64,000 bases of DNA from Mantamonas sphyraenae STR306 (Eukaryota > Protista > CRuMs). The stretch spans positions 62,001 to 126,000 of the forward strand of contig JAPMXV010000046.1 of the NCBI GenBank assembly GCA_026936335.1, given 5' to 3'. The stretch's first letter is position 1; each line of letters starts with the position of its first letter. Of this stretch, positions 39,665-55,681 are shown in pieces. The notes below the pieces were generated by a model, which searched no databases, was not told where the DNA came from, and worked only from the letters and a program-made list of their open reading frames with translations. Position numbers and translations under genes: made by a program.

Positions 39665-42298
39665 ATGAGTAGCAGCGATGCGGTGGCTGTCAAAGTGGCC
39701 GTGCGTGTCAGGCCGATGAATGGTGGGTACAAGGCGAGAAGAGAGACGTGGACGGAACCCGTGATTCTGTGTGTGATGGAGTGGGGGCGCCCGCAGAGTG
39801 CGTAACGGCTGACCCTGCGACGGCTTTTTGGCCGTGCTTCTCATGCAGAGACAAAGGAGGCTGGATGCGAGGTGGTGATTGAGATGGATGGAGGCGAGAC
39901 GCGCATCACGGATCCATCCACGAACAAGACGGTAGGGGAACGCGTGCGCAGGAGGGTGGGATAGAGGCTTGGCGCAGGCTCACACGTTGCTCGCAACTCC
40001 ACCGGCACACTTCACCCTCGCACAATGCACACAGGAGCGCTTTACCTTTGACTACTCGTACTGGTGGGACACGCCACAGGACAAGGTGTACCAGGATCTG
40101 GGCCGTCCGATGCTGGAGAATGCTCTGGACGGATACAACGGCACAGTGTTTGCCTACGGCCAGTGCGTTTTTCAGGGTGCTGTGTGGACGCGCGGGACTC
40201 GAGGGCGATGAACAGGTGCAGATGGCTCACACACAACGGGGGTGGGATCATGACGCGTATTTCTCTGTGGCGGTTGGCCACTGTCGTGTCTGCCTGGTGT
40301 GTTCCCTTTCTGCGCACAGGACCGGATCGGGAAAGTCGTTTTCAATGATGGGAGGTCCGAACGATTTGCGCGGTATCACGCCCCGGCTCAACGAGGACCT
40401 GTTCAAGCTTATTTCAGACAAACCCAAGAACCAGGAGTATTCTGTTTACGTCACATATCTGGAGATCTACCAGGAAAAGCTCCGGGATCTGTTGAACCCG
40501 AGCAGCAAGTGAGTTGTGTGGTTCTGCGGTCACCGACGACGCGCGAGGGACGGGGAACGAGAGGGGAGGGCGGTGGGGTTGATGTGGGGGGGAAGGGGGC
40601 ACACACGACACGATCACACGTACACATGTGCACACAAACGCCAAACACTGACACGACGAGCTTGTTGTGCGCTCGCCACACAGGGAGCTGAAGATCCGTG
40701 AGTCGAAGAAGCTGGGTTTCGTGGTGCCTGACTTGTACAAGGCACCCGTAAAGACAACCGAAGAGATTGTGTCTCTGATGGAAGAAGGCAACGCTGTGCG
40801 TGTGGTGGCCGCAACCAAGATGAACGACCACTCGTCACGCTCTCACTCTGTGTTCACCATCCACTTGCGCATGGTGGACAAGAACGACGTGCAGGCAGGC
40901 GCCCTGACAGCCAAGATCAACCTTGTGGATCTTGCCGGTTCCGAGCGAGCCGACTCGACAGGTGCCACGGGAGAGGTGCTGAAGCAGGGTGCGGCCATCA
41001 ACCAGTCGCTGACGGCTCTGGGACGTGTGATCCGCGTGCTTGCGGGTGAACGCAAGAAGGGCGAGTTTGTGCCGTATCGTGACTCGGTACTGACCAAGGT
41101 GCTGCGCGAGTCGCTCGGTGGCAACTCGCAGACTGTGATGCTTGCCGCCTTGTCGCCCGCCGACAAGAACCACGACGAGACCCTGTCTACGCTCAAGTAT
41201 GCCAACAGCGCCAAGAACATCAAGAACAAATCGCGAAAGAACGAGGACAAGAACACAAAGCTGATCCGAGAGCTGCGCGAACAGATCGAGGCTCTGAGGT
41301 CTGGAATGATGGGCGGGTCGAGCAGCGGCGGAGGCTTGGACGCGTCGTCAATGGCCGAGTACCAGGAGAAGATGGAGGAGCTGGAGTTGGCTAAGTCGCA
41401 GACGTTTGAACAGGTGGAGCAGCAGAAGAAGGAGCTTGAGGAGGAGCGACAGCGCAATCTGCGTCAGCGCGGTGTGATGGAGGCGCTGAAGACGAACCTG
41501 AAGCAGCAGAACGAGGAGCGCATTGAACAGCTGCGCTCGGCAAAGGAGGCCAAGCTGGCCAAGTTCCAGGAGGCCAAGTCGAAGCTGATGGCCGTGAAGG
41601 AGCAGTACCAGAAGGATGTGATGGCCTTCCAAGAAAGCGGCCAGCAGGACGAACAGCTGCGGGCCAAGATTGCCAAGGAGAAGAAGTTCCTGGAGAACGG
41701 TGGACGTGCCATGGAGCAACTGAAGGCAGAGTACACAGTGGTGGAGCAGGAACTGCAGGACGAGATGGCGCTTGGCCAGACGGACGATCTGCTGACGCTC
41801 CAGCAAAAGGAGATGGAGCGACTGAAGGAAAAGCAGGCTCGAGAGCTGCAGTTGATGCAGAACAAGATGCAGGCAGCGATGCAGGCACGCAAGCAGGCCA
41901 TGGAGGAAAAGTTCCAGCAGATGGCGTCGGACAGTGTGAGCAAAGAAGAGCACTACCAGATGCAGGTGGAGTTGGAAGAGATGCGTGGCGCCAAGGAGAT
42001 GCTGGAGGCGCAGCTGAAGATGGCACAGAAGGAAAACGCACGGTTGCAGAGCGTCATTGACGAGGAGCAACTGAAGCACGAGCACGAGATGGAAAAAGAG
42101 CGCTTGAGTCTGTTTCGCATGTTCCGCAAGTACCGCGAGTTTGCAGAGGAAGAGTACCGCGACAGGGAGCGCAAGCTGCTGGTCATGGTGGAGCACAGCG
42201 TCACCGACGCGATTTACCTCAACGCCAAAGTCCAGGAGCTGGAAGCCGCTGCAGGGAGCAGCAGTGGAGGAGGAGGAGGTCAATCCAGCAGTGGTTAA
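39665..42298 (+). CDS. Catalytically intact N-terminal kinesin (kinesin-3-like head) with coiled-coil tail; exons 39665-39722, 39849-39931, 40035-40162, 40320-40508, 40684-42298
   Basis: [19 protein letters not shown]|[39 protein letters not shown]; GT-AG introns. Confidence 0.92.
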
Positions 42299-42439
42299 GG
42301 GCTCAAAGATGTGTGTGAGGTACTGCAGATGGAGTCAAATGGAAGCAAATGATCATGTGGTGTGCATTGCTGCGCATTGTGGCTGGCGCTGTGGTCTCCA
42401 GTTGCTTGTGGCTGGCTCGTGCTCTTCCCAACGTCCTCC

Positions 42440-43309
42440 CTACTTCAACATGGACTGCAGCTCGGCAGCCATATCCTCTGCCTCAACCTCGATGCCCTCT
42501 CCGACAGCAAAACGGACAAAGGCGATGTGGTCTGCGGACGGCAAGTGGTCCGAAAGCAGGATGTCAGGGTTGGTTACCAAATTCTGCTGGAGCATCTCAG
42601 CAGCGTCGGCAGGCTGCATGCCAACCACGTGCACGGCAAGGTCCGACGTAGAGACACCCTGGGGCAACGTGGAAGGAGTTCGGAGGGCGACGAGCGAAGA
42701 AAGCATGCCGGCGTTCTTGTCCTTGCCGACGGCGTTGTGGACGTATGCACCGAGGAGGTCGGGAGTGGAAGCAAAAAGGGCGGCGGCGCGGCGGACAATG
42801 ACGTTCTCGCCTGTGGTGTACGCCTGTTCGTTCATGAGTTCTTCGATTTTTCGATCGTGGTTGTCCGCAGAGGCCATCGGCAGCAGCTGCTCAGGTTCAA
42901 GGTCCAGATGGCTGATGTACACGCCTTCAGGGAGGGTAGCCTGAGAAGCTGCAGTGACAGCAGCCTGCGTCACCTGTGTGGCCAGATTGACAAAGGCGTC
43001 GGTGCGAGCCACAAAGTCCGTGACGGTGTTGATTTCGGCCATGGCTCGGCAAAAGATGGGTGCTGAAGATGTGCTCGACGCATGTTCCACTGCTTCAGAC
43101 ACACACACAAGTCCCGAAGCGGCCACGCGTTCCTTGACATTCGACGACTGGCCCTTTTGGCGGAGCAACTTGGCTGCCTCCTGAACGTCGCCCTCGGCCT
43201 CGACCAGAGCCTTTTTACAGTCCATCATTGGAGCGCTGGTGATTGCGCGCAGTTCCTTAATTGCAGCAGCGCTGACGGCAGCTCGGTTGACGGTGGTACG
43301 AACAAACAT
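42440..43309 (-). CDS. TSFM: Mitochondrial elongation factor Ts
   Basis: IKELRAITSAPMMDCKKAL, EINTVTDFVAR, TGENVIVRR, GAYVH, LAVHVVGMQP, FVRFAVGEG. Confidence 0.9.
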   Translation of the reverse strand: MFVRTTVNRAAVSAAAIKELRAITSAPMMDCKKALVEAEGDVQEAAKLLRQKGQSSNVKERVAASGLVCVSEAVEHASSTSSAPIFCRAMAEINTVTDFVARTDAFVNLATQVTQAAVTAASQATLPEGVYISHLDLEPEQLLPMASADNHDRKIEELMNEQAYTTGENVIVRRAAALFASTPDLLGAYVHNAVGKDKNAGMLSSLVALRTPSTLPQGVSTSDLAVHVVGMQPADAAEMLQQNLVTNPDILLSDHLPSADHIAFVRFAVGEGIEVEAEDMAAELQSMLK

Positions 43310-43398
43310 TGGTGCGGGTGTGGGCGAAGTTGGCTTTTTGGTTGCGATGCTGTGGACAGCGCATGTGGTGTCCAGCCCTTTATGCAGGGAGGGATTTG

Positions 43399-43455
43399 TA
43401 TGTGTGTGTGTGTGGGGGGGGGGGGTGGGTGGGTGGGTGGGTGGGTGGGTGTCTG
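43399..43455. repeat. (TG)n-poly(G)-(GGGT)n tract, potential G-quadruplex
   Basis: A run of about 12 G followed by about 6 TGGG units in the spacer upstream of EF-Ts. Confidence 0.8.
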
Positions 43456-43490
43456 TGTCTGTGCAGGGATGGGTACAAATTGGAGCTCTA

Positions 43491-45211
43491 CTACTTCTTG
43501 CTCTTCTTCTTGCTCTTTCCCTTGTCCTTCTTGGCTGACTTGTCCTTCTTGGCCTTCCCCTTGTCCTTTTTGCCCTTTTCCTTCTTGCCCTTGTCCTTCG
43601 TCTTCTCCTTGCCCTTCTTGGGCGACTTTTTCGAAGCCTTCTTCTCCTTGCCTTTGCCCTTGGACTTGCTCGATTCCCCCGAGGACTTGCCAACCTTGAC
43701 AGTGAGCTGTTTAGCTTTTCCGGACGAGCCTGACGTGGAGCCTGAGCTGCTTCCTGCGCCCGAGGCCTCTGCCCCGTTGCCGTCGTCATCGTCTTCGTCG
43801 TCGTCGTCGTCGCCCTCGTCGTCGCCCTCGTCATCGCTGCTGCCACTGGAGCTGGAAGAGCCACTCTTCTTGAGGGCCTTTTTGTAAGCGATTTCCTGCT
43901 CGATTTTGCGCTCCTCGTCCTCGTCCAGCACGAGGTTGGCGAGCATATTGTGCGCAGTTGTCTTTTTCATGACCGTGCGTGTGATCTTGTTGCCGACAAT
44001 CTTGGCAGAGTTGACCAAGGCACACAGTTTGTCGTTTGTGTCGGCCAGGGATGTGTCACGCCTGGGCAGGACAGGCACAAAGCAAGTGAACGCTGGGCCT
44101 CCAAGCGCCTCTGCGTTGCACATGCAGAGGGTGGAGTTGATGTACGAAGCCTGTTGGCCCTTGAGCAGTGCGTCATACACTCCCTCCATAGCCTCCAGTT
44201 CAGAGACGGCGTCCTTGTGGGAGTTGACCTCGACAACGGACAACTCAAGAGAGCCCATGTGCACCGCAGCCACTCCTATGCGCTGTACCTCGATGCCCAG
44301 CACCGTGTGCACGGGGCCCGGGTGGTCGTCGCGCCACTGCTTAAGGCATTGGTGTGCGGTGCGAGTCAGCCTGCGTAGTGCCAATTGGCCGCGGATGATC
44401 TGCCACTTGAGGTTTGTTTCGACGCTGCGCCGAAAACACGCACACACGCACACACGCATGCAGAGTGAGCACGATCCGGTGTGAGCATCCAATACGTCGC
44501 TGCATGCTTATGGGCGACGTCTATGCAGTGGTGGGCCTCGGCGGGCAGCCGAGACATGGGCCACGAAAGCCGGATAAGGAAGGCAGAGCCGTGAGGGGAA
44601 AAACTCACAAGCCACGACGATCTCTGCGCATCGGCAGCTTTTCGGCGCCCTGCAGCAGGTCGTACACGGTGTCTTCGTGGACCATCAGATAGCTGGCTTT
44701 CATGGCAAACCTGTTGGCCATGCGGTCTGCTGACGAAAGGGTGGCAAAGAGGGCAGACACCACCTCGTCGACGATGGTCGGCTCCTCCCCAGCTTCCTGG
44801 CCACTGGCTCGCAAATAATCAGGTGCCTGTTCCGCAGCGACCATGGCCAGGACAGATACTGGGCAGTTGTGATGCATGGGGTGTGTCTGAGTGTCAATGG
44901 ACTGCCTGCCATGCGCACGTGCGCCCTGGAACGTGCAACTGACCGTTTCCTCCCTCCATCAGCTGCTCCAAGCGCAGGCTGTCGGTGTGCTCAGCCAACG
45001 AGGCCTTGTCGACAGCAATGCCATCAAACTTGTACGATGACGATGTGCCTCCTTCCTTGATGATCTCTGCGTCGTGGTCGCCCGTGACTTGGATTAGATC
45101 GACGTCGCTTTCCCCTTGCGCGTCGTGCACCAGCAGGATGCTCCGCACTTGCGCTGTTTCGGCCACCACCGCTCCTGCCTCCCCACTGGAAGCATTGTCA
45201 GAGGTGCTCAT
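43491..45211 (-). CDS. Highly degenerate kinesin-motor-like protein (no P-loop) with acidic and Lys-rich tail; exons 45211-44944, 44858-44609, 44424-43491
   Basis: Kinesin landmarks in order: YKFDGI, MKASYLMVHEDTVYDLL, RG|FVETNL, SYINSTL..EALGGPAFTCFV, SAKIVGNK. Two GT-AG introns join the frames. Confidence 0.6.
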
Positions 45212-45317
45212 GCTCTGGTGGGTGGCTGGATTGTGTGTTCAGTTCAGTTGGGGGAACGAGAGACTGAGACGCTTTTGTTGGTTTCGGATTGCACCTGAGC
45301 ACATCCACTCCTCACAC

Positions 45318-46333
45318 TCACTCCACACGTGTGCACGTCCCGTTTCCCAGGCTCGTCATGTACTTGAGCGTGGTGCGCGTCTCGTCTGCGACCAGATCCG
45401 CCGGAGACACGCTGCCGATGCACAAAGTGTGTCCACCGCCACACATGGCCTGCTTGAGCAGCTTGGTCAGTGTGCTGTCGCGGTAAGGCACGACTGTGCT
45501 GCTGGATCCGCTCGCACGCTTCTCGTGCAACACCTCAGCCATGGCCTTGAGCGCCTGCTGGCCCTCGTACACCGCCGCGTCCTGCCTGCTCGCGGGACGG
45601 AACGACGCAAGAAGCACAAGCTGCAGGCGACTGGTCACCTCTTCGTCGTTTTCCTCAAACGTGAGGTCCAGCTCAACAAGGGTGTGGCACACCGAGACGA
45701 CACCCCCGTTCTCGCCATCGCTTCCGACGCTGCAGTTCTCCAGCGCAGCCTCGATCTTCTGCATCGCATCTTCATATGACGCGACGCTGTGCGTGCTGAT
45801 GCCTTCCACGAAAGCACCCGTCTTGGGCTGGATGCGCACACGCAAGTTGGCATTCTCGGTTTCCACAAGGTCTCGCACCGAATCACCCACCTCCAACACC
45901 TTGAGTTCCACCTGCAGGTTTTCCACATTGTCCGCCTGCGCAAACACGTCCATGCACGCACGCGGCACAATGCCTCGATTCTCGCCGTAGCCCAAGGCCG
46001 CGTACGCCTTGCCCGAGCCTTGCGCTCCACAGGCAATCACGCACACGTCCTCGCCCTCCATGAGGCAGTCCACCAGCTGCTTGCCCACTTGATCGTACAC
46101 GTCCTCCTGCTCAAAGTTCTCGTACACGTGGTCGAATTCGTACTTCTCAACCAAGGGTCCGCCGCTGAACTCATCGCTCAAACTCAGTGACAGCGATTTG
46201 GGCCCCTCAACGGTCACCGCAGCCGTGCTCTTCACATCTTTCTCAAGTGTGTTGAACGGGCGCACCGTGATTACGCTTGTGCAAGGGCCCAGTGTCGAGC
46301 GCTTTTCGTGCTGCGGCTTTGCGCCGCTGCTAC

Positions 46334-46372
<39 letters not shown>

Positions 46373-49300
46373 CTGCCACACGGCTCTTGCCATCGACCAA
46401 GTACTTAAGGAAGCGCAAGGTGTCCCTGGACTCCTTGGCGACCATGTCGGCGGGCGAAACGGCTGCAATGAACAAACCGTGCCCAGAGCCGCTCAGACTG
46501 TTCTTCAACAGCATGGTGAGTGGGGTGGTGCGGTAGGTCACGACGGCATTCTTGGCCTTGTTGTGTCGCTTCTGGTGAAGAGCTTTGGCCACGTTGCCCA
46601 GGGCTGACAAGGACAGGCTGATCTCTGCGTCGATGGTGTCGGCGATCGATGCGACGGACGCCAGATCAACCATTTGCAGAACACTGCTCACCTCTTCGTT
46701 GTCCTTTTCAAACGTGATATGCAACTCGAAGATGGTGTGGGCCATGGACGCCGTGGAGTTTCGCTCAGTGGCGCGGATGCTGCGGTTTTCTGAGGCCCGT
46801 TCCATGAGCTGTTGGACCTCGTCGTACGAGTTCACCCGGTGACTGCTGAGTCCGTCCACGTAGTAGCCTGTCTTGGGTTGCAAGCGCACACGCAGCGACT
46901 TGTTGCCCGTGTCGATCAGATCTTGCACCGAATTGCGCACTTCCATGGCCTTCAACTCCACCTGCAGGTTGTCCACCTGGTCTCCCAGGCTGAACACCTC
47001 GGAACAGATGCGCGGCACAATGCCTGGCTTGTCGCCGTAGCCCACCATGGCGTACGACTTGCCAGAACCGGTTGCGCCGTACGCCAGAACCGCCACGTCC
47101 TGACCTTGCAGCAGCTGCTCCAACAGCGGACGACCCACCTGCTCGTACACTTCTTCCTGCTCGAATCCTCGTACACGTGGTCAAACTCAAACGTCTCTGG
47201 CGCGCGCTCCTCCCCCAGGTCGACCGTGATGCTCGTGGCGTTTTCCACCGTCACAGCACGTTTGCATCCGCTCGTCTTTTCCAAATGGTTGAACGGACGC
47301 ACAGTCACCATGCCCATGGTGGTGCCGGTTGCCTTCTTCTCCTTCTTGGAACGTTTGGGCTTGCTGCTGCTGCTTCCGCCGCTGCTGCTGCTGCTTCCGC
47401 CACCGCTGCCACTGCTGCCTTCGTCGTTCATGTCATTGGTCACCGACCCACCTGTCAGCAGAGAGACAAACCTGAGAGTGGAGCGCGATTCCGAGGCGAC
47501 CAAGTCCGCAGGCGAGACTGCGCCAATGAAGACGGTGTGTGTGCCCGCCGCCCAGGCCATTCTGCAGCAACCTGGTCAACGCGCTGTCTCGGTAGGGCAC
47601 GAGAATCTTCTTGTTGGGGTTCTTCCGCTGTTTGTTCAGCGAAGACGCCACGTTCGAGAGCACTGTCAAGGAGGTATTGCACTCCGTGATCAACTTGAGG
47701 ATGTGCGGATCCGAGGATGTGTGGTAGGAAGACAAGTCGACAAGCTGCAACTTGCTGGTCACAGTTTCGTCTTTGGTCTCAAAGGAGAAGTCCACCTCGA
47801 TGATGGTGTGACCCAAGGACGACGTCGAGTTCTGATCGGTCGACACAACCGTGCGGTTTGCAATCGCGCTCTGAAGCAGAGCCTCCACTTGCGTGTAAGA
47901 CTCCACCACCTTGCTTGTGAGTCCTTCCACAAAGACACCATGCTTGGGGCTGGTGCGGACCTTGAGGGCCTTCCTGGACGAGTCCAGAAGGTCGAAAACA
48001 CCGCCCATCACCTCCATGACCTTCATCTGCACGTTGAGGTTGTCCACTTTGTCGCCCAGGCCGAACATTTCGTTGCAGATGCGCGGCACAATCCCAGGCT
48101 TGTCGCCGTAACCGATAAAAGCGAACGACTTGCCCGAGCCGGCAGCGCCGTATGTGATTACGCACACATCCTCGCCTTCCAGCAAACGGTCCAAGAGTGG
48201 ACGGCCCACCTCTTCGTACACGTCGGCTTGATCAAAGTCCTCGTACACGTGGTCAAAGGTGTAGGTTTCCGAGCCGCGTCCCTCACCCCGGTCCACCGTC
48301 ACCGTGGTTGCACTGGTCACGCTCACTGCTCGCCCACTGTTGGAGGATGTCTCGAGACGGTTGAACGGGCGCACGGTGATCATGCCCATGATCGTGCCCC
48401 CCTTCGTCTTCTTGCGACGTAGGGGTTTTCCGCTTTCGCTGCCACTGCTGCTGCCACTGCTGCTGCCACTGCTGCTGTTGCCACTTGCAGACGAAGACGA
48501 GGCCTTGGACGCCTTGGAGGAGGACGACAGGCTGCTGACGTCGTCGACCTGAGAGGCTCCAAACGCCGTCAGGAATCGCAGCGTGGACAGACTCTCTTCA
48601 AACATGATGTCTGCTGGCGACACAGCTCCGATAAACAGGCGTGTGCCGTGGCCGTTGAGGGAGCGCTTGAGCAGCATGGTGAGGGGCGAGTTGCGGAATC
48701 CGACGACATTCTTTTTCGCCCTCCCCTTGCCTTTGCCCTTGCTTTGGGCGCTAGCGGCCACCACACGGCCGAGGATGTTGAGCGATCGGTTGACATCGAT
48801 GGCTGCCTTGTCAGAGGTGTCGATGATGTGCTGCTGGCCGACCAGATCCACCAGTTGGAGCGTGGCGGAGGTGGTTTCGCCGTCGCGTTTGTGGGAAACG
48901 TTAACGGACACCACAGCGTGCTTTGACAACGCCAGTGAGTTCATGGCGCTGGATCGCGTTTCTCGCTGTCGCTGTCCAACCTCCATCACTCGCCGCAGGT
49001 GGTCGTAGTCATCGACTTTCTTGGTCACCACGCCGTCCACAAAAGGCCGTTTGTCACGACCTTCGCGCACGCGCAGTTCGCCCTTCTTCTTGGTCAACAG
49101 ATCCGTAACGCCGCCCATGCACATCTCCACCATGCTGATGGTCACCTCCAGTCCTTCCAGCTCACCCTCCTGGGCAAATACCTCGGTGCAGACCCGCGGC
49201 AACAGGCCCGGATTCTCGCCGTACCCAATGGCCGCATACGATTTGCCTGAGCCTGTTGCTCCATACGTCATGATGCACACATCGTCGCCGTTGAGAAGTG

Positions 49301-49529
49301 ATTCCACGAGCGTGGTGCCCACGTCGGCGTACACGTCTTCCTGCGAAAAGTCCTGGTACACGTGGTCAAACGCAAACGCGTATGACAAACTTTCGTCGTC
49401 GGGGTTTTGCAGCGTAATGGTCGAATCATCGACACGCTGAACAATTGCGGAACATCCCATGGTGCGCTCACGATTGTTGAACGGTCTGATGGTCAGCACC
49501 GTTGTCGAAGAAGTGTGCTTCGAAGACAT
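45318..49529 (-). CDS. Protein of four tandem kinesin-3 (KIF28/KLP-6-like) pseudo-motor domains, ~1403 aa; compensating indels at ~47545 (+G) and ~47164 (-T)
   Basis: Four units (about 49500-48570, 48400-47465, 47320-46400, 46290-45360), each TxRPFNxxE..FDHVY..GxxGSGK..GYG...G[IL][VL]PR..LTxLL..VSPAD..TL[RK][FY], separated by Ser/Gly linkers. Confidence 0.85.
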
Positions 49530-49583
49530 TTTTGTTTGGGTGGAGGACAGGTCGCTGCCATTTTTTGCCCCACTTGCATGTGC

Positions 49584-51129
49584 TTACACAGGCATCTCCC
49601 GGTGACGTGTCACCTTTTTCTTGCGCCCTGCAAGCAAGGCGCTGTAGTCCAGCGTTCGAATGGACTCTCCCATGCGCTTCTTGTCGTTTGTTCCCGTCAC
49701 ACAAAACACGGTCGAGATGGCCGCCCCACTGTCGAATGACTCGCGCAGCAGACGCGTCAGCACGTGATTGCGATACGGGATACGCTTCTTGTTGTCAGCG
49801 CGCGCTCGGATGCACTCTTTCAAGGAGAGCAGCGAGGAGTTGATGTGTGCTGCCTCTTGCCTCGTCAGCGACTCCATCGTGTCCATGGACTGCACCTCGT
49901 TGCCCGCAAGGTCCACAAAGTTGAGCGTGTTGTTCATCAACAGTGCGTTCTCGTCCTCATCCATCACTGCCTGCACATTGGCACGGGCCTGGTCGACGGC
50001 GACGGACTGGGCAGCGTAGGTCTCCTCCAGTTCCTCCAGTGCTTGTTTCGTCTCGCTGTCCATTGCATCCATCATGCGATGGGCGTGCGAGTTTCCACCT
50101 CCCACGACCTGCTCGTCCACATCGGCATTTGATTCCTGCTCTTGCGCCGCTGCGCTCTCCATTGCTTTTCCAATCTCCACAATCAGCCCATCCCGGGCGT
50201 ATCCAATTTCAGTCAACGTGTCTTCAGCCTCCACGACTGCCGCCTCTGCATCCAACAGAGCTTGCGTGACAACCGCGAACCTGATCAAGCAGTGCGACCG
50301 CGAGCTCTGGTCATGCACATGATTGGCCTTGGTTTGCCTCATCTCACGACCTACGTCTATCAGAGCAGACGCCTCGTCCACTGACTTGACCAGAGTCTGT
50401 TCGAGCCCACGCACGTGCGTTCGTCGGTCGCTTGACGTCAGCACCGCCACTTCCGCCCGCCCGTTCAGCAGATCGAATGTCGATTTGCCATACACTTCCA
50501 CCATCTCCATACGCAGCTCATACTCTCCTTGCAGCTGCTCCAGCGTCTCCAACATCGCCTGTGCCCCAAGCAGTGCCAGTCCTGGCTGCTCCGGGTTTCC
50601 AAAGATTGTGTGGGTCTTGCCACTGCCTGTGTAGCCATAGCAGAAGCATGTTCCTGTGCGACCACCATGCCCATTCTGAAGCGTCAGTCACCTGGAATTC
50701 CGTTGTTGCCGTTGGCAATTGGCGCGCCAAGGGAATTCCCCGTCTCCCGCACATACCACATCCTCCCAATTGCAGTCGCTCCACCAGAGGCAGGCACACA
50801 CTCTCGAAAAGACCTTGGGTGTCCACTTCGGGCCCAAAGGCCTCGTCCATGGAGAAACAATGGGTGATGGGTTCGTTGAATTCAATCCCTCGCCTGGAGA
50901 TGCGCAGGTGATCCAACGTCATGGTGACCTTGCCCCTTCCATCCTCATCGTCATCCAAAATCCGCTCGTCAAACTGGCCCGGCTCGTCATCCAGAAGTGG
51001 GCGGATGCGGCAAAACACCTTTGCTTTCGGTGCCTCGTTCTCCGCAATGGCTATGCGCTTGCGCACAGACTGCCCGGCGACAGGCAGAACGGTGTTGCCG
51101 CTGTCATTTTCTGAGCGGGTGGTGGACAT
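49584..51129 (-). CDS. Motor-only orphan kinesin with ~100-aa helical insert; exons 51129-50757, 50653-49584
   Basis: VFCRIRP, CYGYTGSGKT (spliced), VHDQSSRSH, FVDLAGNE, INSSLLSLKECIRA, IPYRNHVLTRLL. Confidence 0.88.
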
Positions 51130-51199
51130 GGTCGATACCTTTGTGTGTTGGCTGCCGCGGCGCAGCCGCACACAACCCTGCAACCTCTCCTTGCCTCCC

Positions 51200-54100
51200 A
51201 TGAGCAAGAGCAAGGCTTTCTCCAACTCTGGAGAGTTTCTTGCAAGTAAAGACAGAATACTCACCGTGACGGCCATACGGCCGTTCAATTCGAGGGAAAC
51301 GAACCGCGACGCAAAGAAGGCGATTTCAAAGCGCGACGCCAACACAGTCGTGTGCACAAACGCAGAGGGCGAGGAGAGGGAGATCGAGCTGGACTATGTG
51401 TACGAAGACTTCACTCAAGCGGAGGTGTTTGAAGACATCGGCCAAGATATCCTGGAATCCGTACGAGAGGGAAACAACGTCCTCTTCCTCGTTTTCGGCC
51501 AAAGCGGCTCGGGCAAGAGCTACATCGTCATAGGATTCGGCGAGAACAAAGGCATTTTCCCGCGTGTGTGTGAAACCCTGTTTGGATCGACCGAACTCCA
51601 GAGTGCCGCCATTTCCATGGTGGAGGTCGGCCACATGGGCGTGCACGACCTCCTCTCCGGCGAAAAGATAGCACGCACAGACTCAAATTGGTCCAACGTG
51701 CCAGAACGTGTCGTGGAAACACACGAGCAGGTGATGGAGGCCATCGACACCGGCTCCATGAACCGTTCCGTGGCCGCTACAAACATGAACGCGACGTCCA
51801 CACGCGGTCACACCCTCATTCGGCTCCACTTTACGTTTCGTGGAGGACAACAATCAAATCTCTGCATCGTGGACATGGCTGGCAGCGAGCGCGTGGCTTT
51901 GTCTGGTGTCACGGGGATCCGGTTGAAGGAGTCGTCGTTCATCAACACGTCGTACGTCAGGCTGCGCAACGTGCTTACCGCCGTCCGTCGTCGCGGACAA
52001 GATCAAGCCAACTTCCATGTGCCCTATCGTGAATCGATCTTCACACAGCTTCTGCAGCCGTACCTGGACTGGGGGCGGGTGGCCCTCTTTGGCGCCGTGG
52101 CTCCAACCCTGGACACGTACGACGAAAGCATGATGACTCTCCGCACCCTGGACGAACTGAAAGACCCCGAGTCTGTCGCTGAGAGCAGACTGAGGAGTGC
52201 TAGGCGACTGAAGGCACAAGCCGAGGCAAACCTAAATAGCGGCAGCGCGGGCAGCACCAATGCCAATGTCGACACGCACGGCGAGCACGACGACGGATGG
52301 AAAACGCAGGACGGATTGTTGGACATGTGGAATGCCCACCTGCAGGCTCTTGGCAGTCTGCAGAACGCATCCACAGTGCCAAAAAGCGACTCGGGAAGCC
52401 GGTTGCACCTGGCATGGCTCTCCGACGAAGCGACCAGCAACATTGGTGACATTGGACGTATGGTGGCAGTCCACGTGCACTCCGGGTTGATGCGTGGACT
52501 CAATGCGTGTGTGATGACTACGGGAAACGCCTCGACCACATCAGCAGACGGAATGGCATGCATCGACGAGGAGGTTGTCCGACAGCTGGTCTTGTGCCGG
52601 CAAGGAGAATGGCAAGGACAGTTGAATGTGTTCTCGATCTGGATTCGAACAGACGACGCCGTGATCGACCTTGGCATGGATGATAGGCAAGAGGTTATGG
52701 TCACCTACACGGACGGGATGGTGATTGAAAACTGCACCATGGCCACCATTGCATGTGTACGGGAGTGGCAAACGTGGCGCACAGCGTGTGAGGCTCGTGT
52801 AGATCAACTGGGAGGCCTCCAAGGGCCGCAAACACTCAAGAACGGGATCGTGGTCCATTTGCTCAAACCACATGGTGCTCAAGGCGCAGCTGTGGCGATG
52901 GTTCACTTGGCGAACGACGCAGCATCTTCACTGAAGGAGTATCGCTGCAACCAAGACTTGGCGTTTGCGGACGTGCTCGACAGTATGAGTCACATGGCGG
53001 TGCAGCAGGTGTTGAGGCTCAAGTTGACGCAACAGCAGAGGGTGGTGTGCGACATCTTGCGAGACTGCTTGACGGGAAACGTGGCGCTGGTGCACCGCGG
53101 CGCGTTGAAAGATGGCTGGGAGGCCCTGGACTCCATCTCCGAAGGAGGTTGCAGGCCGGTGGTGCGACCGATGAATCATTGGTCAACATGGGTGCAAGCA
53201 CAAGCAGAGACGGTGGAGCGAGTGGCAACGCTCGCGGCGGCGCTGTGTTCGTCTCGACGGGACGCAGGCGTGTTGCTCGTGGATCAGGACGACGAGACAG
53301 TGCGCAGGGTGTTGAGCACAGCCGCTGAAGCCGTGTTTGCACAGGCGCTGGAAGGAGACACGCTGTGGGTGAGTGCATTTGCATGGACCGAGCAGGACCA
53401 GGTTGGAGACACAAGGCAGGCGAAGAGGTTGCACACAGGCGTTGCGTCCGAACTGCAGCAGTTTGTGGAGACAGAGTGGGAACACACCGTGCATTGGGAG
53501 TGGGCAGTGTGGTCAGAAACCACACACGAACAGCGATCGCTGCACGTGCACGTATCACAGGATGCGAGCAAGGCTGATGGCACAGAGTGGCCGCTGGCCG
53601 AGTGGTCCGTGCTGGTGAACAGTGCCGATGCAGCCAAGGCATGGCAAAGCGAGCCACAACGGGACCTGGTGCGATGTGTACGCGTGCGTCCCGTGCTGGA
53701 AAGGGAGATGGTGCACGAGGACAACAGAGACCCGTCGTCATACAGCAACGTGGACGTGGGTGGAGCGTGTGTGAGGTGGCGACCTGGCTTGCTGGCGGAA
53801 GCCGAGCACGTGTTTCACAATGCGTCCTGCGGCGATATGTGGAAGTCACTTGGACCGGGATTGGTAGAGGCGGTTTTGCACGGGGAGAGGCCAGCGATGG
53901 TGAGTGCGTTTGGGGGAGTGGGCACGGGCAAGTCGTACGCGCTGTTGGGGGTTGAGGGCAAAGAGTACGGGTTGATTGCCCGCTTTGTGCAGCAGGTGCT
54001 GGAAGAGAGCGATGGGGAGGCACGTGTCGATGTGGGTGTTCTCATGTGTCGCTACAAGGCAACCGGGGTGATGGATCTGCTGGCGGACGACGAGCCCCAG

Positions 54101-55681
54101 AAGCGCAGGTTGCGTCAGACTCGCAACGAACCCCATGCACACGTGGAGGACGAGGTGCGCGTTGCAGTCCACAGTGCAGAAGACGTCCACAAGCAATTGA
54201 ACAAGGCGATGCTCACCCTTCGACGATGGGTGACGCTCATGGGCACGCGTTCGTCCGATTTCATGTGGATGGCCGAGGTACAAGTGAACGGCATCCCTGT
54301 GCAGTTTCTGCACCTAAAGGTGATGGACCCTTCAATGACTGCGTACCGCACGCTGATGATGGATCGCATGCACCTTGCTTTCCACCTGGTAACCGGGCAT
54401 TTGGACAAGCCGTTCCTGCGCTGGCGCGAATTGCCCCTGACGCGCCTGGTACAGCGCGTGCTGGACCATCCACATTCCTATGAGGTGCAAATGGCCTGTG
54501 TTGCCCCGACCAAAACGAACGCCAAGTCGGAACTGGCACTGACAGAGGCGACGCAGTCCACACTGGAATTCCTCAATGGCTTGGTGGACGCTCGCGACCT
54601 ACCGCAGCTCAAGACCCTGCTGCGCAAACACAGCAGCGACTATGAGCTGGTCACCATGGACGAGCTGGCACAAGAAGAGCGAGACGCAAGGTGGGACTCT
54701 TCCTCCACGCTCTCCTCCTCCTCCTCATCGTCGTCGTCGTCGTCTTCACAGGCATGGATGCAGGAGTTGAACGAAGTTATGGTGGAGAACATCATGAGAG
54801 AGTACTCGGTGATGGTAGACGAGCGCTCGGAAGATGGCATGGACTGTTTGAGCGTGCAGGACGAGCAGACGCTGGTGTTCAAGGAAGACGAAAGGACGTT
54901 TCAGTTTGACCGCGTCATGGCACACAAGCACCCAAGCGAGGTGTGGAGCGGCATTCGGACAGGTATTGTGGGTCAGTTTGTCAAGGGCAGCCACGACGGC
55001 GTGGTGATGCTGTATGGGCAGACTGGAGCCGGCGACGAGGCCTTTGCAAGCCACCTCGCCAATTTCGCGAAAGACTCGCTGGCGTGCATGCAGGCGGAGA
55101 CCAAGCTGTCAGTGAGTATGTCTGTCGTGCGTGGTGGCCAGTGGATTGACTTGTTGGTGGAGGACGGAGTCATGGACAGCAACGACAGCAAGCGTGCTTT
55201 CACCCGAGTCAAGTGGGTGGAATTGGACACAATGGTCGAGCTGCAGCACTGGTACAAAACGGCATTCGGTACAAAGATGCAGGACGGAGGCGTGGCTGGT
55301 TCCTCGGACGACACCGCAGTCGTGGCCATTCGCAACTCGAACAACACCTTTTACTTTGTGCGACTGCCCGGTTCGCAGCGCCTGTACAGCAATCAGGGTG
55401 ACGAGAACGAGCTCAAGGCGCACAGGGAAGCTCAGTACGCACTGTCCAGTGTACTGAATGTGCTCGCGGAGCTCCTGAAGGAGTCCAGCCGCAGCCGCTT
55501 CATTCCGTGGCGCGATTCCATCCTGGCCAGGAACTTGCAGGCTCCTTTGACAGAAGGCCATCTGTTCTTCTTCACCCATGTGCTGTCACATGTCACCGCG
55601 TACGAGGAGTCACTTTCGTCGGTGCGTTGTTTGGACCGCCTGGCAAGTTCCGGTGGGGGGGGTTCGAAGCGACGCAGGTGA
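51200..55681 (+). CDS. Multi-head kinesin (1493 aa): one intact motor followed by 3-4 degenerate motor domains
   Basis: Head A has AIRPFNSRE, GQSGSGKS, NATSTRGH, DMAGSER, VPYRES. Later heads have VRVRP/GGVGTGKS/WRELPLTRLV and FQFDRV/LYGQTGAG/RLPGSQR/IPWRDSILAR. Confidence 0.82.
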   Translation: MSKSKAFSNSGEFLASKDRILTVTAIRPFNSRETNRDAKKAISKRDANTVVCTNAEGEEREIELDYVYEDFTQAEVFEDIGQDILESVREGNNVLFLVFGQSGSGKSYIVIGFGENKGIFPRVCETLFGSTELQSAAISMVEVGHMGVHDLLSGEKIARTDSNWSNVPERVVETHEQVMEAIDTGSMNRSVAATNMNATSTRGHTLIRLHFTFRGGQQSNLCIVDMAGSERVALSGVTGIRLKESSFINTSYVRLRNVLTAVRRRGQDQANFHVPYRESIFTQLLQPYLDWGRVALFGAVAPTLDTYDESMMTLRTLDELKDPESVAESRLRSARRLKAQAEANLNSGSAGSTNANVDTHGEHDDGWKTQDGLLDMWNAHLQALGSLQNASTVPKSDSGSRLHLAWLSDEATSNIGDIGRMVAVHVHSGLMRGLNACVMTTGNASTTSADGMACIDEEVVRQLVLCRQGEWQGQLNVFSIWIRTDDAVIDLGMDDRQEVMVTYTDGMVIENCTMATIACVREWQTWRTACEARVDQLGGLQGPQTLKNGIVVHLLKPHGAQGAAVAMVHLANDAASSLKEYRCNQDLAFADVLDSMSHMAVQQVLRLKLTQQQRVVCDILRDCLTGNVALVHRGALKDGWEALDSISEGGCRPVVRPMNHWSTWVQAQAETVERVATLAAALCSSRRDAGVLLVDQDDETVRRVLSTAAEAVFAQALEGDTLWVSAFAWTEQDQVGDTRQAKRLHTGVASELQQFVETEWEHTVHWEWAVWSETTHEQRSLHVHVSQDASKADGTEWPLAEWSVLVNSADAAKAWQSEPQRDLVRCVRVRPVLEREMVHEDNRDPSSYSNVDVGGACVRWRPGLLAEAEHVFHNASCGDMWKSLGPGLVEAVLHGERPAMVSAFGGVGTGKSYALLGVEGKEYGLIARFVQQVLEESDGEARVDVGVLMCRYKATGVMDLLADDEPQKRRLRQTRNEPHAHVEDEVRVAVHSAEDVHKQLNKAMLTLRRWVTLMGTRSSDFMWMAEVQVNGIPVQFLHLKVMDPSMTAYRTLMMDRMHLAFHLVTGHLDKPFLRWRELPLTRLVQRVLDHPHSYEVQMACVAPTKTNAKSELALTEATQSTLEFLNGLVDARDLPQLKTLLRKHSSDYELVTMDELAQEERDARWDSSSTLSSSSSSSSSSSSQAWMQELNEVMVENIMREYSVMVDERSEDGMDCLSVQDEQTLVFKEDERTFQFDRVMAHKHPSEVWSGIRTGIVGQFVKGSHDGVVMLYGQTGAGDEAFASHLANFAKDSLACMQAETKLSVSMSVVRGGQWIDLLVEDGVMDSNDSKRAFTRVKWVELDTMVELQHWYKTAFGTKMQDGGVAGSSDDTAVVAIRNSNNTFYFVRLPGSQRLYSNQGDENELKAHREAQYALSSVLNVLAELLKESSRSRFIPWRDSILARNLQAPLTEGHLFFFTHVLSHVTAYEESLSSVRCLDRLASSGGGGSKRRR

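What the first reader, a model, noticed from the sequence alone, without database searches (positions are those of the whole stretch)
45318..49529. Four-headed, stalk-less kinesin: four tandem motor domains in one polypeptide
Seen: one intronless ~1403-aa reading frame (after two compensating 1-nt indels) made only of four complete ~310-aa kinesin heads joined by ~30-45-aa Ser/Gly linkers ending in basic patches (KPLRRKKTK, KPKRSKKEKK, KPQHEKR). There is no coiled coil or cargo domain. Established: kinesins normally carry one head per chain and dimerise through a stalk; RPFNxxE and GYG...GIVPR resemble KIF28/KLP-6-type kinesin-3 heads. Inference: a covalently multivalent microtubule binder or cross-linker, for example for a protist cytoskeletal root or pellicle array. 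I know of no description of this architecture.
Basis: partly seen in the sequence, partly recalled or inferred. Interest (0 to 1): 0.93.

Follow-up and report, generated by a model that had tools for sequence, protein, structure and literature searches.

The report
Four-headed, ATPase-dead kinesin chain
A tiny marine flagellate (Mantamonas sphyraenae) has an expressed gene for one protein made only of four kinesin motor heads in a row, all missing the residues needed to split ATP, so it most likely grips or bundles microtubules instead of walking on them; I found no other protein built this way.

Summary
Both frame breaks (47544, 47163-65) are assembly errors: two deep DNA runs lack them, and an RNA-like run covers the gene without introns. 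The read-supported ORF is 1403 aa: four full kinesin heads (Pfam; AlphaFold models of heads 1 and 4) joined by 40-58-aa Ser/Gly linkers with basic patches, no stalk or tail. The genome matches Mantamonas sphyraenae (CRuMs). The finding's text omits the key point: all four heads have lost the switch I Arg, the switch II Glu, the L7 YNE motif and the conserved neck-linker motif, while keeping P-loop glycines and lysine, tubulin-facing elements and a basic loop 12. They are pseudo-motors derived from a KIF28-like kinesin-3; an intact paralog remains in the genome. The gene is under purifying selection (11 synonymous vs 6 replacement differences). Best reading: a non-motile multivalent microtubule binder or cross-linker. 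No four-headed kinesin ranked among 1.84 billion protein representatives or appeared in the papers searched; two-headed natural chains, an engineered tandem kinesin and single-headed pseudo-kinesins exist. No ortholog found. Earlier scan notes on this same stretch saw the switch loss; none on other DNA had this architecture.

The parts
45318..49529 (-). Read-supported single ORF, 1403 aa, about 151 kDa, no introns seen
48561..49505 (-). Head 1 (aa 9-323): P-loop GATGSGKS intact; switch I NSLALSKH; switch II DLVGQQ; basic loop 12 at 48711-48743
48387..48560 (-). Linker 1, 58 aa, Ser/Gly-rich, basic patch at 48402-48428
47456..48386 (-). Head 2 (aa 382-691): P-loop GAAGSGKS; switch I NSTSSLGH; switch II DLSSYH
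47542..47544 (.). Assembly error 1: one extra base beside a variable site; absent from contigs of DNA runs X1 and X2
   Evidence: tables 3, 4, 8
47315..47455 (-). Linker 2, 47 aa, basic patch at 47333-47362; bridged by one X3 (RNA-like) contig 47166-47541 that also spans the apparent stop at 47433
46398..47314 (-). Head 3 (aa 739-1044): P-loop GATGSGKS; switch I NSTASMAH; switch II DLASVA; loop 11 shortened
47163..47165 (.). Assembly error 2: one base missing; both haplotypes in X1, X2 and X3 carry it
   Evidence: table 4
46278..46397 (-). Linker 3, 40 aa, poly-Ser, basic patch at 46299-46319
45321..46277 (-). Head 4 (aa 1085-1403), most eroded: P-loop GAQGSGKA lacks the Mg-binding Ser/Thr; switch II LLASFR lacks even the Asp; still models as a kinesin fold (pLDDT 93)

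Best explanation
A lineage-specific pseudo-kinesin array. A KIF28-like kinesin-3 was duplicated, lost stalk and tail, lost its hydrolysis machinery, and its head was repeated four times in one reading frame. The protein most likely acts as a monomeric, non-motile microtubule-associated protein: each head docks on tubulin through the retained loop 8, helix 4, loop 12/helix 5 and helix 6 surface, helped by basic loop 12 and the basic patch before heads 2-4; avidity from four heads replaces dimerisation through a stalk. Linkers (contour 15-21 nm, relaxed about 4 nm) let neighbouring heads reach the next tubulin dimer, the next protofilament or a nearby microtubule, so it stabilises a lattice or bundles a fixed array. 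Heads 1-3 may hold nucleotide without splitting it. SHOWN: ORF, transcription, fold, ancestry, motif loss, purifying selection. INFERRED: no ATPase, microtubule binding, bundling, cellular site.
For: Intact ORF and RNA cover. Switch I Arg 0/4, switch II Glu 0/4, switch II Gly 1/4, L7 YNE 0/4, against 361 of 364 full heads among fetched relatives with both motifs. The switch II Glu-to-Ala change almost abolishes hydrolysis and traps kinesin-1 on microtubules (PMC12005725); switch I Arg or switch II changes decouple microtubule binding from nucleotide state (PMC2064809). Tubulin-facing invariants are better kept: loop 8 region 4-6 of 6, loop 12/helix 5 6-9 of 9, versus switch II/loop 11 4-6 of 14. 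Neck-linker I-x-N motif lost. Selection: 11 synonymous vs 6 replacement differences, pN/pS 0.17, p=4e-4; between heads dS 1.2-1.65 vs dN 0.41-0.72. Intact KIF28-like paralog elsewhere in the genome (L013). Precedents: KIF26B binds microtubules without ATPase (PMC3387196); Vik1/Cik1 (PMC4338441); degenerate KinesinWW in the diplonemid feeding apparatus (10.64898/2026.03.30.714256).
Against: No binding, ATPase or localisation data. The helix-4 Asn that contacts tubulin is kept only in heads 1-2, and heads 2-4 are net acidic, so some heads may bind weakly or not at all. No ortholog was found, so conservation across species cannot back the function. The basic patches also look like nuclear localisation signals (own knowledge).
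Confidence: 0.62

Rival explanations
1. Nucleotide-gated binder or decoy: heads 1-3 bind ATP/ADP through the intact P-loop and change affinity without hydrolysis, or the protein mainly occupies kinesin-3 sites and so regulates traffic by the intact KIF28-like paralog or the neighbouring multi-head kinesin.
For: The P-loop/helix 2 block is the best-conserved stretch among all four heads (60-70% pairwise) although hydrolysis residues are gone; head 1 of the neighbour at 50921-55678 is the sister of these heads and keeps near-canonical switches.
Against: The elements that carry the nucleotide signal to the tubulin face (L7, switch I, switch II/loop 11) are the ones lost; the P-loop block may be kept for fold stability; head 4 lacks the Mg-binding residue.
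Confidence: 0.14
2. A scaffold whose heads bind partners other than microtubules (in the way yeast Smy1 acts with myosin-V), possibly nuclear because of the basic patches.
For: Net acidic heads, eroded helix 4 in heads 3-4; Smy1 precedent (PMC4966985 abstract).
Against: Loop 8, loop 12 Arg, helix 5 and helix 6 motifs and a basic loop 12 are retained in all or most heads.
Confidence: 0.1
3. A slow but active single-chain walker with non-canonical catalysis, a natural version of the engineered tandem kinesin.
For: An engineered two-head tandem kinesin-1 walks processively (10.1101/2025.06.11.659012); P-loops of heads 1-3 are intact; both models place a short strand after helix 6 where a neck linker docks.
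Against: Each head lost the Arg-Glu pair with different residues and no common substitute; linkers are 40-58 flexible residues, unlike the short rigid linkers needed in the engineered case.
Confidence: 0.06
4. A decaying by-product of local duplication in a kinesin-rich island, with no current function.
For: Long branches, progressive erosion towards head 4, several other degenerate kinesins in the genome, no ortholog.
Against: 4.2 kb open frame kept while synonymous sites between heads are near saturation; pN/pS 0.17; transcribed.
Confidence: 0.05
5. Assembly artefact or several separate genes.
For: Two frame breaks in the assembly; the read tool skipped the Ser repeats of linkers 1 and 3, so no listed contig bridges them.
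Against: Both breaks vanish in read contigs; depth is even; no stop or intergenic space between heads; linker 2 is bridged by an RNA-like contig; the skipped repeats are triplet repeats.
Confidence: 0.03

Closest known systems
Kinesin-3, KIF28/KLP-6 subfamily
   Same: Best sequence and structure matches; GYG signature after the P-loop; basic loop 12; heads nest in kinesin-3 (SH-aLRT 99) and beside KIF28-named proteins (94).
   Different: Four heads instead of one; no neck coil, FHA, stalk or tail; catalytic switches lost.
Non-motile pseudo-kinesins (KIF26A/B, Vik1/Cik1, Cos2, Smy1, diplonemid KinesinWW)
   Same: Kinesin fold kept, hydrolysis residues lost; several bind microtubules without ATP turnover.
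   Different: All have one head plus stalk or partner domains and come from other families; KIF26B and KinesinWW also lose the P-loop, which heads 1-3 keep.
Engineered tandem kinesin-1 (10.1101/2025.06.11.659012)
   Same: Heads joined head-to-tail in one chain with no coiled coil.
   Different: Artificial, two active heads, short poly-proline linker, walks.
Natural two-headed kinesin chains in databases (P0098 Polykrikos, P0074/P0168, P0026, P0109; P0018 Paulinella)
   Same: More than one kinesin head per polypeptide.
   Different: Two heads only, catalytic motifs intact, mostly separated by 700-900 aa and of different families; not related to this gene.
Tandem tubulin-binding arrays such as TOG arrays (XMAP215/CLASP) and doublecortin repeats (own knowledge)
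   Same: Works like: repeated tubulin-binding folds with basic linkers give avidity in a monomer.
   Different: Unrelated folds; analogy only, not tested.

Membership tests
Kinesin superfamily (fold) | PF00225 domain above the curated cut-off over most of the profile | tested here: met
   Four heads at 169-219 bits vs cut-off 29.3
Kinesin superfamily (fold) | Kinesin motor fold | tested here: met
   Head 1 pLDDT 88, TM 0.83-0.87 to KIF1A/KIF13B/KLP-6; head 4 pLDDT 93 with the same element order; models lean on an alignment of kinesins
Active kinesin motor | P-loop GxxxxGK[ST] | tested here: met
   Met in heads 1-3; head 4 has GKA
Active kinesin motor | Switch I NxxSSRSH with the Arg | tested here: not met
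   Arg absent in 4 of 4 heads
Active kinesin motor | Switch II DLAGSE with Gly and Glu | tested here: not met
   Glu absent in 4 of 4, Gly in 3 of 4
Active kinesin motor | Conserved neck-linker motif after helix 6 | tested here: not met
   I-x-N motif lost in all four; head 2 keeps one Asn in the latch register; models show a short strand there
Active kinesin motor | Microtubule-stimulated ATPase and movement | not testable with these tools
   needs bench assay
Kinesin-3 | Head falls in the kinesin-3 clade | tested here: met
   SH-aLRT 93 and 99; quick trees, long branches
Kinesin-3 | Basic K-loop in loop 12 | tested here: met
   6, 5, 4 and 2 basic residues in heads 1-4
Kinesin-3 | Neck coil and FHA domain after the head | tested here: not met
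   No Pfam match besides the head; Ser/Gly linkers follow instead. Filed as kinesin-3-derived, not as a kinesin-3 motor
KIF28/KLP-6 subfamily | Groups with KIF28-named proteins | tested here: inconclusive
   Clade support 94, under the 95 mark; top hits KIF28P, but fungal Unc104-type heads score as well with the profile
Non-motile pseudo-kinesins | Fold kept, hydrolysis residues lost | tested here: met
Non-motile pseudo-kinesins | ATP-insensitive microtubule binding | not testable with these tools
   needs co-sedimentation

The most novel reading that the evidence does not exclude
The kinesin head has been turned into a repeated structural module: a single chain of four non-hydrolysing heads that reads or sets microtubule lattice spacing (several dimers along a protofilament, or a fixed inter-microtubule gap), with binding tuned by nucleotide held in heads 1-3. 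Together with its multi-head neighbour it would define a class of kinesin-fold array MAPs that build the Mantamonas cytoskeleton.
Probability: 0.3. Interest if true: 0.82.

Novelty: new variant of a known kind. Interest (0 to 1): 0.62.

Why it matters
Kinesins get their valency from coiled-coil stalks; here it is written into one chain, and the motor has been traded for a binding module four times over. If it binds as predicted, it shows a route from motor to structural MAP by domain repetition, gives a ready natural test of what switch I/II loss does with the P-loop left intact, and offers a first molecular handle on the cytoskeleton of CRuMs, a deep eukaryote branch. It also shows that the public assembly splits a real gene by two one-base errors, so automated annotation will miss the architecture. 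Limits: one species, no ortholog, no bench data.

Tried and rejected
True frameshifts or programmed recoding: rejected, reads lack both indels. Collapsed repeat or misjoin: rejected, even depth and diverged heads. Read-through from the in-frame upstream kinesin (a fifth head): rejected, both read alleles keep a stop at 49584-86 and RNA contigs and depth differ. Ortholog searches: three word searches, a full HMMER scan of 1.84 billion representatives, JGI metagenomes (best 31%, no multi-head ORF), ESM Atlas: only canonical kinesins. The top multi-stretch hits P0017, P0021, P0020 look like duplicated or broken gene models. 'KISc-KISc' rows in the Wickstead 2010 table that I could see are a head plus the 'kinesin-related' domain, and no three-head row exists; only 2 of 14 occurrences were shown. 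Paper searches for tandem or multiple motor domains found only the engineered construct. Gene conversion among heads: heads 2 and 3 are closest or tied in five of six windows, no clear mosaic. A joint in loop 12 of head 1 (48725-48742) has RNA depth ten times the gene's and probably comes from another Lys-rich locus; unresolved. The putative second head of the neighbour and the last exon of the downstream gene gave only weak profile matches.

Full report
Observation. On the minus strand from 49529 to 45318 the assembly holds three frame pieces that together encode four kinesin heads. Pfam PF00225 matches each, at E 9e-65, 1e-56, 7e-60 and 2e-49. The heads are 35-54% identical in protein and 63-71% in DNA, spaced 1050-1113 nt.

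Source. The assembly has 25,061,354 bases in 78 contigs. The FALCON assembly of Mantamonas sphyraenae has 78 contigs of mean length 321,299.41, which multiplies to the same total; it is diploid, built from PacBio reads and mostly mono-exonic (PMC10492846). The identification rests on this match, not on a marker gene. Mantamonas is a small gliding biflagellate of the CRuMs group.

The two frame breaks are assembly errors. Contigs of two deep DNA runs (X1, X2) cover the gene at even depth, lack one base at 47544 and carry one extra base at 47163 or 47165 in both haplotypes. Both errors sit at variable sites, where polishing of a diploid often fails (inference). Run X3 is labelled DNA by guess but behaves as RNA: it skips an 85-nt intron of the downstream gene and has a gap between genes. 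Its contigs lie along the gene from 45315 to 49382 with no splice joint, carry the extra base at 47163-65, and one of them spans linker 2 and the apparent stop at 47433. For the 47544 site the RNA evidence is indirect (contigs break there). The tool skipped the Ser repeats in linkers 1 and 3, so these are not bridged by a listed contig; they are triplet repeats in a long-read assembly. These runs come from one study, probably the strain assembled. With the read-supported bases the frame is 4212 nt, 1403 aa, one stop. I built this model only inside scripts; public tools were queried with its pieces by reference. The upstream kinesin is in the same frame, but both read alleles keep its stop at 49584-86.

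The gene is maintained. Seventeen single-base differences between the assembly and read contigs are 11 synonymous and 6 replacement, pN/pS 0.17, p = 4e-4; they are a mix of alleles and possible consensus errors. Between heads dS is 1.2-1.65 and dN 0.41-0.72, yet no stop has entered.

The heads are pseudo-motors. Switch I (canonical NxxSSRSH) reads NSLALSKH, NSTSSLGH, NSTASMAH and NGGVVSVCH; switch II (DLAGSE) reads DLVGQQ, DLSSYH, DLASVA and LLASFR. The Arg and the Glu are gone in every head, each time with a different residue. The L7 YNE motif is gone too, loop 11 is altered or shortened, and the I-x-N neck-linker motif is lost. The P-loop is intact in heads 1-3 and lacks its Ser/Thr in head 4. 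For control, 361 of 364 full heads among fetched relatives carry both switch motifs. In kinesin-1 the Glu-to-Ala change almost abolishes hydrolysis and traps the microtubule-bound state (PMC12005725), and switch I or II changes decouple microtubule binding from nucleotide (PMC2064809). Tubulin-facing parts fare better: of family-invariant residues the heads keep 4-6 of 6 around loop 8, 6-9 of 9 in loop 12/helix 5 and 4-5 of 8 in helix 6, against 4-6 of 14 in switch II/loop 11. Loop 12 is basic. Heads 1 and 4 model as kinesin folds (pLDDT 88 and 93); head 1 matches KIF1A, KIF13B and KLP-6 at TM about 0.85. These models lean on alignments of normal kinesins and say nothing about activity.

Ancestry. 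The four heads form one clade (SH-aLRT 97), inside kinesin-3 (93 and 99 in two quick trees), beside KIF28-named proteins (94). Their sister is the first head of the oppositely oriented neighbour at 50921-55678 (97-99), a 1586-aa frame with one near-canonical head followed by at least two eroded ones; long-branch attraction may contribute to that join, though shared sequence around the first strand-loop and P-loop region supports it. A normal KIF28-like kinesin-3 with intact motifs and neck remains on contig 60 (L013). Head 1 is the outlier; heads 2-4 duplicated later. The likely history (inferred): duplication of the KIF28-like gene, loss of tail and catalysis, serial head duplication.

Mechanism (inferred). 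Linkers of 58, 47 and 40 residues, half Ser/Gly, have contour lengths of 21, 17 and 15 nm and relaxed spans near 4 nm. That is enough for successive heads to sit on neighbouring tubulin dimers (about 8 nm along, 5-6 nm across; own knowledge) or on an adjacent microtubule. Without a hydrolysis cycle the heads would bind statically or diffusively; four heads plus basic loop 12 and three basic patches give avidity without a stalk. This is how KIF26B behaves as a single head (PMC3387196) and how Vik1/Cik1 heads act as footholds (PMC4338441); a degenerate kinesin sits in the microtubular feeding apparatus of a diplonemid (10.64898/2026.03.30.714256). I put a non-motile binder or cross-linker at 0.62, a nucleotide-gated binder or motor-site decoy at 0.14, a non-microtubule scaffold at 0.10, an active walker at 0.06, a relic at 0.05 and an artefact at 0.03.

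Is it known? A profile of the four heads run over 1.84 billion representatives, where extra heads add to the score, put no protein with more than two near-complete heads at the top, and all 150 best hits have canonical switches. Word searches, metagenomes and the ESM Atlas gave only ordinary kinesins at 37% identity or less to head 1. Natural two-headed chains do exist: a recurring type in dinoflagellate and marine transcripts with two active-looking heads far apart, and a Paulinella model with two close heads. The 2010 survey of 1624 kinesins shows no three-head architecture in its table (PMC2867816). An engineered two-head tandem kinesin-1 walks (10.1101/2025.06.11.659012). I found no paper on a natural four-headed or multi-pseudo-head kinesin within the library searched.

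Verdict. Real, expressed and selected; a kinesin-3-derived array of four catalytically dead heads. It is a new variant built from known parts (pseudo-kinesin heads, tandem repetition), so far in one species and without bench support. Interest 0.62.

Notes on procedure. The spliced downstream gene was examined exon by exon only; the joined search was left out.

Noticed in passing
window 50921-55678 (+): Second multi-head kinesin, 1586-aa frame: head 1 near canonical (NATSTRGH, DMAGSE) and sister to the four heads; at least two further eroded heads by HMM, a possible further one too weak to call. Not checked against reads.
   Followed up: partly
window 43494-45211 (-): Spliced downstream gene; intron 44859-44943 confirmed in run X3, contig depth 316-475; weak kinesin-like matches exon by exon, no P-loop seen, acidic then Lys-rich tail.
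   Followed up: partly
window 49584-51357 (-): Kinesin with canonical switches and an acidic insert of about 100 aa in the head; its stop is only 54 nt before the start of the four-head gene.
   Followed up: partly
window 39665-55681: Five kinesin-family genes in about 16 kb, including an ordinary kinesin-3 at 39883-42295 (+).
   Followed up: partly
L024 (G000:C71), L028 (C27), L029 (C10): Other single-head kinesins of this genome with P-loop kept and switches eroded; L024 has a long coiled-coil-like tail.
   Followed up: partly
proteins P0026 (L036:87-4271), P0074/P0168, P0098, P0109, P0147: Recurring natural two-headed kinesins in dinoflagellate and marine transcript data: one DLAGSE head and one DCAGTE head, 30-37% alike, usually 700-900 aa apart; I found no description.
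   Followed up: partly
window 49544-49584: Dense allelic differences, with one-base indels, in the short spacer between the upstream kinesin and the four-head gene.
   Followed up: no
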